DNA of 64,000 nucleotides from Heptranchias perlo (taxonomy: Eukaryota), in the NCBI RefSeq assembly GCF_035084215.1, contig NC_090340.1, positions 3,968,001 through 4,032,000 of the forward strand, given 5' to 3'. Both the position numbers and the translations under genes were made by a program. Shown here piece after piece: positions 53,776 to 54,109 of this stretch (the stretch's first letter is position 1; each line of letters starts with the position of its first letter). Under the pieces are notes generated by a model. The model was not told the DNA's origin, did not search any database, and saw only the letters and a program-made list of their open reading frames with translations.

Positions 53776-53890
53776 CCTCTACAGACCGATTCCCAACCTT
53801 TAACTTCTGCCGTTTCCTTTTGGGGTTAATGGTGATTCTACTGGGAACCACCATCATTGTCGACCATTTGAAATCAGTCCCCTTTTTAAG
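53776..53890 (+). CDS. Gene C, candidate activating-type TM exon with an intramembrane Arg (not in the ORF track)
   Basis: Acceptor gtatctgcccaccAG at 53774-53775 (alternative in-frame AG 9 nt downstream) and donor AG|GTAAG at 53891. Phase 1 matches the C1 exon. Encodes ASTDRFPTFNFCRFLLGLMVILLGTTIIVDHLKSVPFL(R); Arg codon CGT 53811-53813. Read-through of the donor stops at once (AGG TAA, 53889-53894). A homologous copy lies at 18020-18137 on the minus strand. Confidence 0.72.
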
Positions 53891-54109
53891 GTAAGATATT
53901 GATTTTTTGATTCAGATCATTGCCGTGGAATTATAGTAATAAAACACAGGAAACAAAATAATAGAATCCTTATTTTGCGACTTTAGATGTCTGGGTCGAT
54001 TGTTTGCCTGGACATTGGCTGCCATTCATTCATCTTCACTTTCTTATCTATCCGAGTATTTACAGCAAGAAAGGTAAACCATTTTACAGGGTGTAAAAGT
54101 GCCACTCAG

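What the first reader, a model, noticed from the sequence alone, without database searches (positions are those of the whole stretch)
53776..53894. Hidden TM exon with an FcRgamma-type N-x-x-R motif attached to a SIRP-like ectodomain
FPTFNFCRFLLGLMVILLGTTIIVDHLKS aligns without gaps, by eye and from memory, to the FcalphaRI/LILRA-type TM pattern (YTxxNLIRxxxxGLVLxxLxxLLxExWxS). It shares the Asn at -3, the Arg near the outer leaflet and the acidic residue at the inner boundary. Those receptors signal through FcRgamma, whereas mammalian SIRPbeta1 uses a central Lys and DAP12. An LRC-type TM on a VJ-C1 ectodomain would be an unusual domain combination, suggesting the activating module was acquired by exon shuffling.
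Basis: partly seen in the sequence, partly recalled or inferred. Interest (0 to 1): 0.85.

Follow-up and report, generated by a model that had tools for sequence, protein, structure and literature searches.

The report
Shark activating receptor's arginine membrane exon
The flagged stretch is a real, already annotated membrane-anchor exon of a sevengill-shark immune receptor, and its buried arginine suggests it signals through a partner protein, which is of moderate interest and not yet proven.

Summary
The peptide is real. Window 53776-53890 (+) is exon 4 of a five-exon gene ("gene C": leader, VJ, C1, TM, tail). Each exon translates to an exact piece of RefSeq XP_067853493.1/XP_067853497.1 of Heptranchias perlo (280 aa, automatically named "RLA class II ... 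DP alpha-1 chain-like"). So the exon is not hidden.

It is also not terminal. The GTAAG donor after 53890 is used, and the TAA at 53892-94 is intronic. A fifth exon (56022-56091) supplies a tyrosine-free tail.

The segment is a predicted TM helix. Asn-x-x-Arg lies in its outer third and Asp at its inner end. Asn, Arg, two glycines and the IVDxxK end are conserved in a bamboo-shark relative, whereas a dead inverted copy in the window has lost Asn, Arg and the donor.

Genes A and B beside it have 82-86% identical C1 domains (B's V is also alike; A's V lies outside the window), uncharged TMs and tyrosine-motif tails. This is therefore a paired activating/inhibitory cluster.

Gene C's tail is a decayed copy of the inhibitory ITIM-like exon (Tyr to Ala), so the TM exon replaced the old one.

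Coupling to an FcRgamma/CD3zeta-type adaptor is plausible but untested, and descent from LRC-type TMs is not shown. The scan had noted this family at other loci.

The parts
46243..46297 (+). Gene C exon 1: start codon and signal peptide (MSTRDVLRYLSALAIICT + 1 base), donor GT at 46298
   Evidence: Exact substring of P0024 residues 1-18; splice context
46498..46818 (+). Gene C exon 2: germline-joined V-J domain (ends ...GNGTELIVY)
   Evidence: Pfam V-set E 2.9e-08; exact substring of P0024 residues 20-125
50760..51041 (+). Gene C exon 3: C1-set Ig domain
   Evidence: Pfam C1-set E 2.3e-12; exact substring of P0024 residues 127-219; contig pieces start at 50759 and end at 51040/41
53776..53890 (+). 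Gene C exon 4 (the finding): stalk, TM helix with N-x-x-R and inner Asp, start of tail; phase 1 in, phase 2 out
   Evidence: exact substring of P0024 residues 221-257; joint 51040->53775 GT..AG in 2 of 3 runs and pieces ending at 53890; KD 2.33
56022..56091 (+). Gene C exon 5, coding part: tail (S)NTTDDKLAAAAPDFTDSRKAAN, stop TAA 56089-56091; 3' UTR runs on (AATAAA at 56512-17 and 56703-08)
   Evidence: tblastn of P0024; sequence; exact substring residues 259-280; gapless match to the ITIM-like exon of 11 of 11 inhibitory relatives
18022..18132 (-). Dead inverted copy of the TM exon: STDRFQTIRLCHFLVGLMLNLMGPTHIVDRFKSVPFL (Asn->Arg, Arg->His, donor GT->CT)
   Evidence: tblastn E 1.8e-11, 65% of 37 aa; DNA alignment; flanking intron homology 52965-53354 ~ 18613-18191; KD 1.47
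571..5961 (+). Gene A (3' part; V exon lies before the window): C1 571-855, uncharged TM 2294-2425, tyrosine-motif tail exons 5561-5695 and 5812-5961; inhibitory partner
   Evidence: tblastn; C1, TM and last-exon tail read identical by eye to P0008 = XP_067853492.1 of H. perlo
26862..35074 (+). Gene B: leader 26862-26915, V 27094-27436 (frame shift near 27320), C1 31028-31318, uncharged TM 33143-33274, tail exons 33873-33917, 34677-34793, 34925-35074; inhibitory type, probably decaying
   Evidence: tblastn

Best explanation
Window 53776-53890 is exon 4 of an intact, annotated five-exon gene of the sharpnose sevengill shark (gene C = XP_067853493.1). The gene encodes a type I membrane receptor with a non-rearranging VJ domain, one C1 domain, a short stalk, a TM helix and a 32-residue tail without tyrosine.

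Shown:
- The gene structure.
- The TM character of the segment.
- An Asn-x-x-Arg in the outer third of the helix and an Asp at its inner end.
- Conservation of these residues in a second shark order, and their loss in a dead copy.
- Neighbouring genes with closely related C1 domains (and, for gene B, V domain), uncharged TMs and tyrosine-motif tails.
- A tail exon that is a decayed copy of the inhibitory ITIM-like exon.

Inferred: gene C is the activating member of a paired receptor cluster. It arose from an inhibitory-type gene in which the uncharged TM exon and the middle tail exons were replaced by a different TM exon, and the remaining tyrosine was lost. The buried Arg pairs with the membrane aspartates of a dimeric ITAM adaptor. 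Because the Arg lies about one third of the way into the helix, in an NxxR context, the adaptor is more likely of the FcRgamma/CD3zeta type than DAP12. Binding of the shared ligand would then give an activating signal that opposes the inhibitory neighbours.
For: Gene model:
- All five exon translations are exact substrings of P0024, in order, and the four split codons fit.
- The splice sites are canonical.
- A C1-TM joint stands in 2 of 3 runs, with no depth in the 12 intron bins 51334-53721.

Domains: V-set E 2.9e-08 and C1-set E 2.3e-12.

TM helix:
- KD score 2.33.
- AlphaFold2 helix T227-K252 in P0001.
- Asn(-3), Arg(0), Gly(+4) and Gly(+11) fall on one helical face.

Conservation:
- Of the 4 aligned sequences, the 3 from intact genes (gene C, P0001, P0014 of Chiloscyllium) keep N-x-x-R.
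- All 4 keep both glycines and I-V-D-x-x-K.
- The dead copy has Asn->Arg and Arg->His.
- The two species belong to Squalomorphii and Galeomorphii.

Paired cluster:
- Gene A = P0008 and gene B have C1 domains 82-86% identical to gene C's (B's V is also alike; A's V lies outside the window), uncharged TMs and tails with tyrosine motifs.
- Of the 23 family proteins fetched, 3 have the NxxR TM, 14 an uncharged TM with a Tyr-bearing tail, 1 an uncharged TM and then a cut-off, and 5 no TM.

Origin:
- Homology to genes A and B ends at 51202.
- The tail aligns without gaps to the same ITIM-like stretch of 11 of 11 inhibitory tails. 0 of 2000 shuffles reach the score for 4 of them, and Tyr is replaced by Ala.

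Adaptor type: passages of PMC2413239, PMC4536121 and PMC6557307 describe NxxR TMs with a C-end acidic residue as FcRgamma-associating. This was shown by co-expression for two Xenopus receptors.
Against: - No adaptor was identified, and none can be looked for in one window. Akula et al. 2014 (passages) found no FcRgamma homologue in the shark genomes then available.
- No significant similarity of the TM to any other protein was found: 0 hits at E<=0.001 among 1.84 billion representatives, 0 in the PDB with the single sequence, and only 3 non-significant hits with the profile.
- The 'DYT' lead-in described for LRC TMs is not matched as written (D-R-F-P-T here).
- Expression of gene C itself is not shown. 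The spliced contigs differ from the window at 4 of 116 and 5 of 66 letters, which fits the paralogue P0001.
- The runs' RNA nature is a guess of the tool.
- PMC6557307 notes that receptors with this TM usually reach the surface without FcRgamma, so surface dependence may not be seen.
- Only 2 genes outside gene C carry this TM among the proteins I could fetch.
Confidence: 0.6

Rival explanations
1. The TM is a true evolutionary relative of the LRC-type NxxR TM (FcalphaRI, LILRA, OSCAR, GPVI, NCR1, Xenopus XFL). It came to the VJ-C1 gene by exon shuffling.
For: - The TM shares NxxR, an aromatic residue at -7, an acidic residue at +17 and a short tail.
- The exon and about 0.8 kb of intron before it are a module unrelated to the inhibitory genes.
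- A stray inverted copy of the module lies between genes A and B.
- NxxR TM exons are known to sit on unrelated ectodomain families in Xenopus.
Against:
- There is no significant hit to any LRC or FCRL protein in a search that read 1.84 billion proteins.
- No C2-only LRC genes were found in sharks in 2014.
- A motif of three residues can arise by convergence on the same adaptor.
- The combination is old within sharks (P0014), so no recent shuffling event is visible.
Confidence: 0.2
2. The Arg couples the receptor to a DAP12- or DAP10-type adaptor, as in mammalian SIRPbeta1 and activating KIR, not to FcRgamma/CD3zeta.
For: - The general rule is one basic TM residue against a pair of acidic residues in the adaptor (recalled knowledge).
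- NCBI's pipeline names 5 of the 21 relatives found SIRPalpha-like.
Against: - The residue is Arg, not Lys. It lies 8 residues into a 24-residue hydrophobic span, not at its centre.
- The NxxR context is the one tied to FcRgamma in the papers read.
Confidence: 0.15
3. The receptor does not signal. It is a decoy or a decaying copy, whose Arg snorkels to the membrane surface and whose tail is only the wreck of an inhibitory tail.
For: - The tail is a decayed ITIM-like exon with no tyrosine.
- Expression of gene C itself is not shown.
- Neighbouring gene B is decaying and a dead TM copy exists.
Against: - All five exons are open with canonical splice sites.
- Asn, Arg, both Gly and the Asp are kept between two shark orders but lost in the dead copy.
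- A close paralogue with the same TM is spliced in the run contigs.
Confidence: 0.1
4. The stretch is not an exon that is used: it is a chance open frame or a never-spliced pseudo-exon.
For: None after testing. The read-through stop at 53892-94 made a terminal-exon reading possible at first.
Against: - It is an exact match to a RefSeq protein.
- The GT..AG joint and the pieces ending exactly at 53890 stand in two runs.
- The peptide is conserved in P0001 and P0014.
Confidence: 0.02

Closest known systems
NxxR-type TM of FcRgamma-coupled receptors (mammalian LILRA, FcalphaRI, OSCAR, GPVI, NCR1, TARM1; chicken ggFcR; Xenopus ILR, XFL and SLAM-like receptors)
   Same: It has Asn three residues before an Arg at the outer end of the TM, an acidic residue at the inner end and a tail without tyrosine motifs. 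It is a separate TM exon and sits in gene families that also hold inhibitory members.
   Different: The ectodomain is VJ + C1, not C2-type domains. The lead-in is R-F-x-T, not D-Y-T. The glycines are at +4 and +11. No significant sequence similarity was found. The partner is untested, and the host group was reported in 2014 to lack FcRgamma and LRC genes.
SIRPalpha / SIRPbeta1 paired receptors
   Same: It has an N-terminal V domain followed by a C1-set domain. Inhibitory members have tyrosine motifs, and an activating member has a basic TM residue and no motif. Paired members have closely similar ectodomains. NCBI names 5 of 21 relatives SIRPalpha-like.
   Different: There is one C1 domain, not two. 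The basic residue is an Arg in the outer third, not a central Lys (the SIRPbeta1 detail is recalled). No SIRP is among the 60 rows shown by each PDB sequence search or the top 50 fold matches.
NKp30 (NCR3), the other non-rearranging VJ receptor with a TM arginine
   Same: It has a germline-joined VJ domain and an activating-type TM. The NKp30 V domain is among the fold matches (6yjp_A, Z 13.1). Its use of CD3zeta/FcRgamma is recalled, not read here.
   Different: NKp30 has no C1 domain. I made no sequence-level comparison of the TMs, because no tool gave me its TM.
UrIg / UrIg2 of elasmobranchs (non-rearranging VJ-C1 genes)
   Same: It has a single-exon VJ domain followed by C1-type domains in sharks. 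UrIg2 (9dmx_A) is the third-best PDB hit of the C1 exon, E 4.3e-15.
   Different: UrIg2 has nine C1-type domains and is antibody-like (passages of PMC12227049). Here there is one C1, and the gene belongs to a paired activating/inhibitory family.
PRARP genes (Fu et al. 2019, J Immunol)
   Same: From recall only: non-rearranging VJ plus C-type domain receptors with ITIM tails in non-mammalian vertebrates. This could be the same or a sister family.
   Different: I could not read the paper. I saw only its reference entry and one mention in PMC10751288. No sequence was available, so membership is untested.
Activating KIR derived from inhibitory KIR
   Same: The activating gene derives from an inhibitory ancestor and keeps a relic of the inhibitory tail (the KIR statement is from a passage of PMC6557307).
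   Different: In KIR the activating TM is the inhibitory TM with a Lys. Here the TM exon is a different module.

Membership tests
NxxR-type (FcRgamma-associating) TM subtype | Arg in the N-terminal (outer) part of the TM helix | tested here: met
   The Arg is the 8th of 24 residues between the flanking charged residues. It lies inside the predicted helix of P0001 (R232 in helix 227-252).
NxxR-type (FcRgamma-associating) TM subtype | Asn three residues before the Arg | tested here: met
   N-F-C-R in gene C and P0001, N-I-F-R in P0014: 3 of 3 sequences from intact genes. It is lost in the dead copy.
NxxR-type (FcRgamma-associating) TM subtype | [quoted passage not shown] | tested here: met
   Asp at +17, invariant in 4 of 4 aligned sequences.
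NxxR-type (FcRgamma-associating) TM subtype | Consensus D-Y-T lead-in before the motif (PMC6557307) | tested here: not met
   Here the lead-in is D-R-F-P-T-F-N (gene C) and G-R-F-H-T-I-N (P0014). An aromatic residue and a Thr are present but with other spacing.
NxxR-type (FcRgamma-associating) TM subtype | Cytoplasmic tail without tyrosine signalling motifs | tested here: met
   The tail DHLKSVPFLSNTTDDKLAAAAPDFTDSRKAAN has no Tyr.
NxxR-type (FcRgamma-associating) TM subtype | Detectable sequence relatedness to LRC/XFL TMs | tested here: inconclusive
   There were 0 hits at E<=0.001 among 1.84 billion proteins with the 38-aa exon and nothing significant in the PDB. A query this short has little power, and no LRC TM sequence was available from a tool for a direct alignment.
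NxxR-type (FcRgamma-associating) TM subtype | Physical and functional association with FcRgamma | not testable with these tools
   This needs co-expression. The only statement read on a shark FcRgamma gene is its absence in 2014.
SIRP family | Ectodomain of one V and two C1 domains | tested here: not met
   There is one V-set and one C1-set exon, and the protein of 280 aa is fully accounted for.
SIRP family | Activating member with a central TM Lys that pairs with DAP12 (recalled) | tested here: not met
   The basic residue is an Arg in the outer third. There is no Lys in the hydrophobic span.
SIRP family | Specific sequence or fold similarity to SIRP domains | tested here: inconclusive
   No SIRP chain is in the best 60 rows shown for the C1 exon or the V exon, nor in the top 50 of the fold search. 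Those lists are crowded by antibodies and TCRs, so absence from them is weak evidence.
Paired activating/inhibitory IgSF receptor cluster (general kind) | Neighbouring genes with closely similar ectodomains, one with a charged TM and no motif, the others with an uncharged TM and tyrosine motifs | tested here: met
   Gene C against genes A and B: C1 82-86% identical, with B's V also alike (A's V is outside the window). The TMs and tails are as stated.
Non-rearranging VJ-C1 receptors (UrIg-like, PRARP-like) | Single exon encoding V joined to a J-like G-x-G-T-x-L-x-V end, followed by a C1-set domain | tested here: met
   The V exon ends ...SNGNGTELIVY. It matches Pfam V-set and the next exon matches C1-set. 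I did not look for an RSS.

The most novel reading that the evidence does not exclude
The NxxR transmembrane module, and with it a FcRgamma/CD3zeta-type partnership, is older than bony fishes. On this reading it was already attached to antigen-receptor-like VJ-C1 receptors in the common ancestor of sharks, and perhaps of all jawed vertebrates. The LRC/FCRL activating TM of tetrapods would then descend from, or share a source with, this shark exon, and sharks would have the matching adaptor despite the 2014 report of none.
Probability: 0.2. Interest if true: 0.7.

Novelty: new variant of a known kind. Interest (0 to 1): 0.42.

Why it matters
Paired activating and inhibitory receptors with a charged TM are well known in mammals, birds, frogs and bony fishes. 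For cartilaginous fishes the papers I could read report no LRC-type receptors and no FcRgamma, and none of the papers searched holds both 'NxxR' and 'shark'.

Here an intact shark gene joins a non-rearranging, antigen-receptor-like VJ-C1 ectodomain to a TM that carries the three residues used as hallmarks of FcRgamma-coupled receptors. Those residues are conserved across two shark orders.

The gene also shows how it was made: a decayed ITIM-like exon is still its last coding exon, and its TM exon is a foreign module. That gives a concrete, cheap test (co-expression with shark adaptors, Arg and Asn mutants) of when the receptor-adaptor partnership arose.

The gene is already annotated, though misnamed, and the scan met the family at other loci, so the value lies in the reading, not in a new gene.

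Tried and rejected
1. Terminal-exon reading. The frame runs into TAA at 53892-94 and an AATAAA lies near 53938, so I first took the exon as the last one. I rejected this because contig pieces end exactly at 53890 and go on for about 680 letters elsewhere, and P0024 continues into 56022-56091.

2. A candidate next exon near 57329, guessed from the block 57289-57439 that abuts the dead copy. I rejected it once the real exon 5 was found.

3. Ideas on why the paralogue P0001 ends at ...SVPF (a shorter T run, or a substitution that makes a stop). I could not settle this without its DNA and left it open.

4. phmmer of the 38-aa exon against 1.84 billion representatives gave 0 hits.

5. PDB searches. 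The single sequence gave 0 hits at E<=10. The profile of 4 sequences gave only SpoVM (E 0.22, 0.57) and an HLA-DQ alpha TM (E 3.9), none significant.

6. The ESM Atlas search on the exon returned only unnamed short clusters and two transporters at scores of 0.79-0.90, with no lead.

7. A region search with residues 205-256 of P0001 returned only P0001 and P0002 among 6 candidates. It missed P0014, so that blank means little.

8. BLASTP of the gene C tail against gene A's last exon gave no alignment. Sensitive blastn of the exon 5 flanks against genes A and B gave one chance-level hit, E 0.13. The tail homology therefore rests on the shuffle test alone.

9. The fold search of the P0001 model returned generic V and C1 matches (NCAM, IgNAR V, HLA-DP, B7-H6, nectin, TCR) tied at Z 13-15. 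It gave no family assignment.

10. Paper searches that gave nothing useful. 'NxxR'+'shark' returned 0 papers. FCER1G/TYROBP/elephant shark, CD3zeta/FcRgamma/shark, FcRgamma/elephant shark, signal regulatory protein/shark/ITIM and PRARP found no paper on this family or on shark adaptors beyond Akula 2014. My statement that the family is not described rests on these searches of an open-access library only.
   - Figures and supplements of PMC2413239, PMC6557307, PMC12227049 and PMC10751288 were not seen. They may hold TM alignments or gene lists that bear on it.

11. The findings look-ups by adaptor words and by sequence were blank.
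Full report
What is at the coordinates.

Window 53776-53894 has one open frame. It reads STDRFPTFNFCRFLLGLMVILLGTTIIVDHLKSVPFLR and then TAA. The other two frames hold 4 stops and 1 stop. The stretch starts right after ...cccaccAG and is followed by AAG|GTAAG. The window holds no N.

The gene.

A tblastn of the neighbouring V, C1 and TM pieces against the window showed three related genes and one stray copy:
- Gene A: C1 571-855, uncharged TM 2294-2425, tail exons 5561-5695 and 5812-5961. 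Its V exon lies before the window.
- Gene B: leader 26862-26915, V 27094-27436 with a frame shift near 27320, C1 31028-31318, TM 33143-33274, tail exons up to 35074.
- Gene C: leader 46243-46297, V 46498-46818, C1 50760-51041, TM 53776-53890.
- An inverted copy of the TM exon at 18132-18022.

Pfam gives V-set (E 2.9e-08) for the V exon of C, C1-set (E 2.3e-12) for its C1 exon, and nothing for the TM exon. All splice sites of gene C are canonical. The junctions are phase 1, except the 3' end of the TM exon, which is phase 2.

The species and the annotation.

- A search with the V exon returned 6 proteins among 19 candidates. I gave it inside the 180-aa mechanical ORF 46290-46829, scoring residues 70-180 only, so that the length filter reached full-length proteins.
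- A search with the full hit P0001 returned 21 proteins among 481 candidates, all from sharks and rays.
- P0008 (XP_067853492.1, Heptranchias perlo) reads identical by eye to gene A in the C1 domain, the TM and the last tail exon. The window is therefore from H. perlo.
- The 90% cluster of P0001 holds a second member, P0024 = XP_067853493.1 / XP_067853497.1. It is 280 aa and is named 'RLA class II histocompatibility antigen, DP alpha-1 chain-like'.
- Each exon of gene C, translated on its own, is an exact substring of P0024 in order: residues 1-18, 20-125, 127-219 and 221-257. A fifth exon at 56022-56091 gives residues 259-280. The four split codons give the missing V, V, A and S.

So the exon is part of a public gene model and is not hidden. 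It is also internal: the TAA at 53892-94 lies in intron 4. The cytoplasmic tail is DHLKSVPFLSNTTDDKLAAAAPDFTDSRKAAN, which has no tyrosine.

The exons were searched apart, and the full-length sequences I used were database proteins.

Run evidence.

Three runs of the same sample were listed. Their RNA nature is the tool's guess, and they hold 0.00-0.03 of the sampled words. I laid them on 48150-54100.
- 2 of the 3 runs (X1, X3) hold a contig with the joint 51040->53775, which skips 2734 letters and has GT..AG ends.
- One contig of 862 letters lies with letters 1-66 on 50975-51040 and letters 67-182 on 53775-53890. It then runs on for 680 letters that do not lie on the stretch.
- A second contig of 795 letters starts at 53775, ends its match at 53890 and runs on for 679 letters.
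- All 12 bins from 51334 to 53721 have zero depth in all three runs.

This is what spliced RNA looks like, and it shows that both splice sites of the exon are used. The contigs differ from the window at 5 of 66 and 4 of 116 letters. The C1 differences fit the four amino-acid changes of the paralogue P0001 (inference).

Is it a membrane segment?

- The best 19-residue Kyte-Doolittle window is 2.33 with the Arg included. The value is 2.81 for gene A's TM and 1.47 for the dead copy.
- AlphaFold2 on P0001, run with a 16-sequence family alignment (mean pLDDT 78), gives one helix over T227-K252. N229 and R232 lie in its first two turns.
- Between the flanking charged residues (D-R before, D-H-L-K after) there are 24 residues, and the Arg is the eighth.
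- On an ideal helix, Asn(-3), Arg(0), Gly(+4) and Gly(+11) lie within 60 degrees of each other. This is arithmetic, not a structure.

Conservation.

Four sequences were aligned: gene C, P0001 (another H. perlo gene), P0014 (XP_043563377.1, Chiloscyllium plagiosum) and the dead copy. Nine columns are invariant: R, F and T of the lead-in, both glycines, and I, V, D and K at the inner end.
- The three sequences from intact genes keep N-x-x-R.
- The dead copy has Asn->Arg, Arg->His and donor GT->CT.
- H. perlo is a squalomorph and C. plagiosum a galeomorph, so the TM type on this ectodomain predates the split of the two main shark lineages.

Of the 23 family proteins fetched:
- 3 carry this TM (2 genes).
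- 14 have an uncharged TM and a tail with 3-5 tyrosines.
- 1 has an uncharged TM and is then cut off.
- 5 have no TM.

How the gene was made.

- DNA homology of gene C to genes A and B (83-84%) covers the leader-V region and the C1 exon, and stops at 51202, which is 161 bp after the C1 exon.
- The stretch 52965-53923 matches only the inverted stray copy.
- The activating and inhibitory TM peptides are not alike.
- The 23-residue tail of gene C aligns without gaps to the same place in 11 of 11 inhibitory tails tested. That place is the ITIM-like stretch T-D-x-x-L-T-Y-A-S-L-D-F-T-x-S-Q-K-x-A, and Ala stands where they have Tyr.
- 0 of 2000 shuffles reach the observed score for 4 targets (P0006, P0009, P0012, P0023). 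For the other 7 targets p is 0.002-0.025.
- BLASTP of the tail against gene A alone found nothing, and the flanks show no DNA similarity.

I read this as an inhibitory-type ancestor whose TM and middle tail exons were replaced by a different TM module, and whose last exon decayed. It says nothing about where the module came from.

What the TM type means.

- Passages of Guselnikov et al. 2008 (PMC2413239) define a TM subtype with a conserved NxxR at its N-terminus. It is shared by LILRA2, PIR-A, NCR1, GPVI, OSCAR and FcalphaR. They show that two Xenopus receptors with it associate with FcRgamma.
- Passages of PMC4536121 report 49-50 such exons in Xenopus genomes, on LRC, FCRL and CD2/SLAM family genes.
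- Passages of PMC6557307 add a D-Y-T lead-in and acidic residue(s) at the C-end. They also note that such receptors usually reach the surface without FcRgamma.

Against these features the shark exon meets NxxR, the acidic end and the motif-free tail. It does not meet D-Y-T as written.

The spacing from Arg to the acidic residue and to the Ser is the same, but the G-L pair is off by one.

No statistical support for relatedness could be had.

Akula et al. 2014 (passages) found no FcRgamma, FcRL, PIGR or C2-only LRC genes in the shark genomes of the time. Whether newer assemblies hold FcRgamma I could not check.

I therefore commit to 'adaptor-coupled activating receptor, most likely through a zeta/gamma-type adaptor' at about 0.6. 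For 'true relative of the LRC TM' I give about 0.2.

The ectodomain.

- The C1 exon's best solved relatives are antibody constant domains and UrIg2 (9dmx_A, E 4.3e-15). The V exon's are scFv, TCR alpha, pIgR and VNAR chains.
- The fold search gives generic V and C1 matches tied at Z 13-15.
- No SIRP chain appears in any of these lists.
- NCBI's automatic names for the 21 relatives disagree: 5 are SIRPalpha-like, 6 tapasin-related-like, 2 NCR3LG1-like, 1 CD276, 2 H-2 class I-like and 5 unnamed.

'SIRP-like' is thus fair as a description of layout and logic, not as membership.

Earlier notes of this scan.

Notes on the same genome describe the same family at other places, about 1.15 Mb before and 1.9 to 11.3 Mb beyond this window. 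Two follow-ups also concluded that it is a mislabelled, undescribed paired VJ-C1 family. Notes on this window flagged the VJ-C1 exons, the inverted remnant and gene A's tail. I checked the remnant, the VJ-C1 exons and the paired layout myself. New here are the identity with XP_067853493.1, the fifth exon and its origin, and the cross-order conservation of the TM residues.

Verdict.

This is a new variant of a known kind (an activating partner in a paired IgSF receptor family), already annotated under a wrong name. Interest is moderate.

Noticed in passing
window 27094-27436, 31028-31318, 34925-35074: Gene B looks like a decaying inhibitory gene. Its V exon needs a frame shift near 27320, its C1 lacks one residue relative to A and C, and its last exon reads LTSASLD where gene A has LTYASLD (Tyr lost).
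   Followed up: partly
window 17827-18613 (-): An inverted stray copy of gene C's 3' module (intron, TM exon and a block that matches 57289-57439) lies between genes A and B. It lacks any match to exon 5 and to the 3.4 kb that separate these blocks in gene C.
   Followed up: partly
window 54121-55555: Intron 4 of gene C holds a long degenerate minisatellite (unit about 29 bp, TCACACACCCATCTCTCACTCACTGTTAC, over 20 copies, with an inverted end at 55491-55555). Its long false ORFs fill the ORF list.
   Followed up: partly
window 53336-53692: CT-rich and (TATC)n microsatellites lie directly upstream of the TM exon's acceptor. Read laying skipped 53326-53719 as a repeat.
   Followed up: no
window 43666-44112 (-), 57440-57994, 58168-58880 (+), 61441-62138 (-): These are reverse-transcriptase-like ORFs and LINE fragments, with further copies at 13540-15913 and 23779-24223.
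   Followed up: no
P0010, P0017, P0019 (Heterodontus, Chiloscyllium, Hemiscyllium): Annotated isoforms of inhibitory family members skip the TM exon and join C1 directly to the tyrosine-motif tail. It is unclear whether these are soluble forms or model artefacts.
   Followed up: no
P0001 (XP_067853510.1), elsewhere on the same chromosome: The second activating paralogue of H. perlo ends at ...HLKSVPF, two residues before the end of the TM exon, so its tail is only 8 residues long. The contigs seem to come from it. I could not see its DNA.
   Followed up: partly
window 53823-53882 (peptide LGLMVILLGTTIIVDHLKSV): The inner half of the TM weakly resembles the TM of an HLA-DQ alpha chain (9ruh_A, E 3.9, not significant). 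It may only reflect a shared G-x-x-x-x-x-x-G packing pattern.
   Followed up: no
window 48970-49060 and 50189-50320: Very deep contig pile-ups with many odd joints occur in intron 2 of gene C in all three runs. They are most likely an expressed interspersed repeat, not part of the gene.
   Followed up: no
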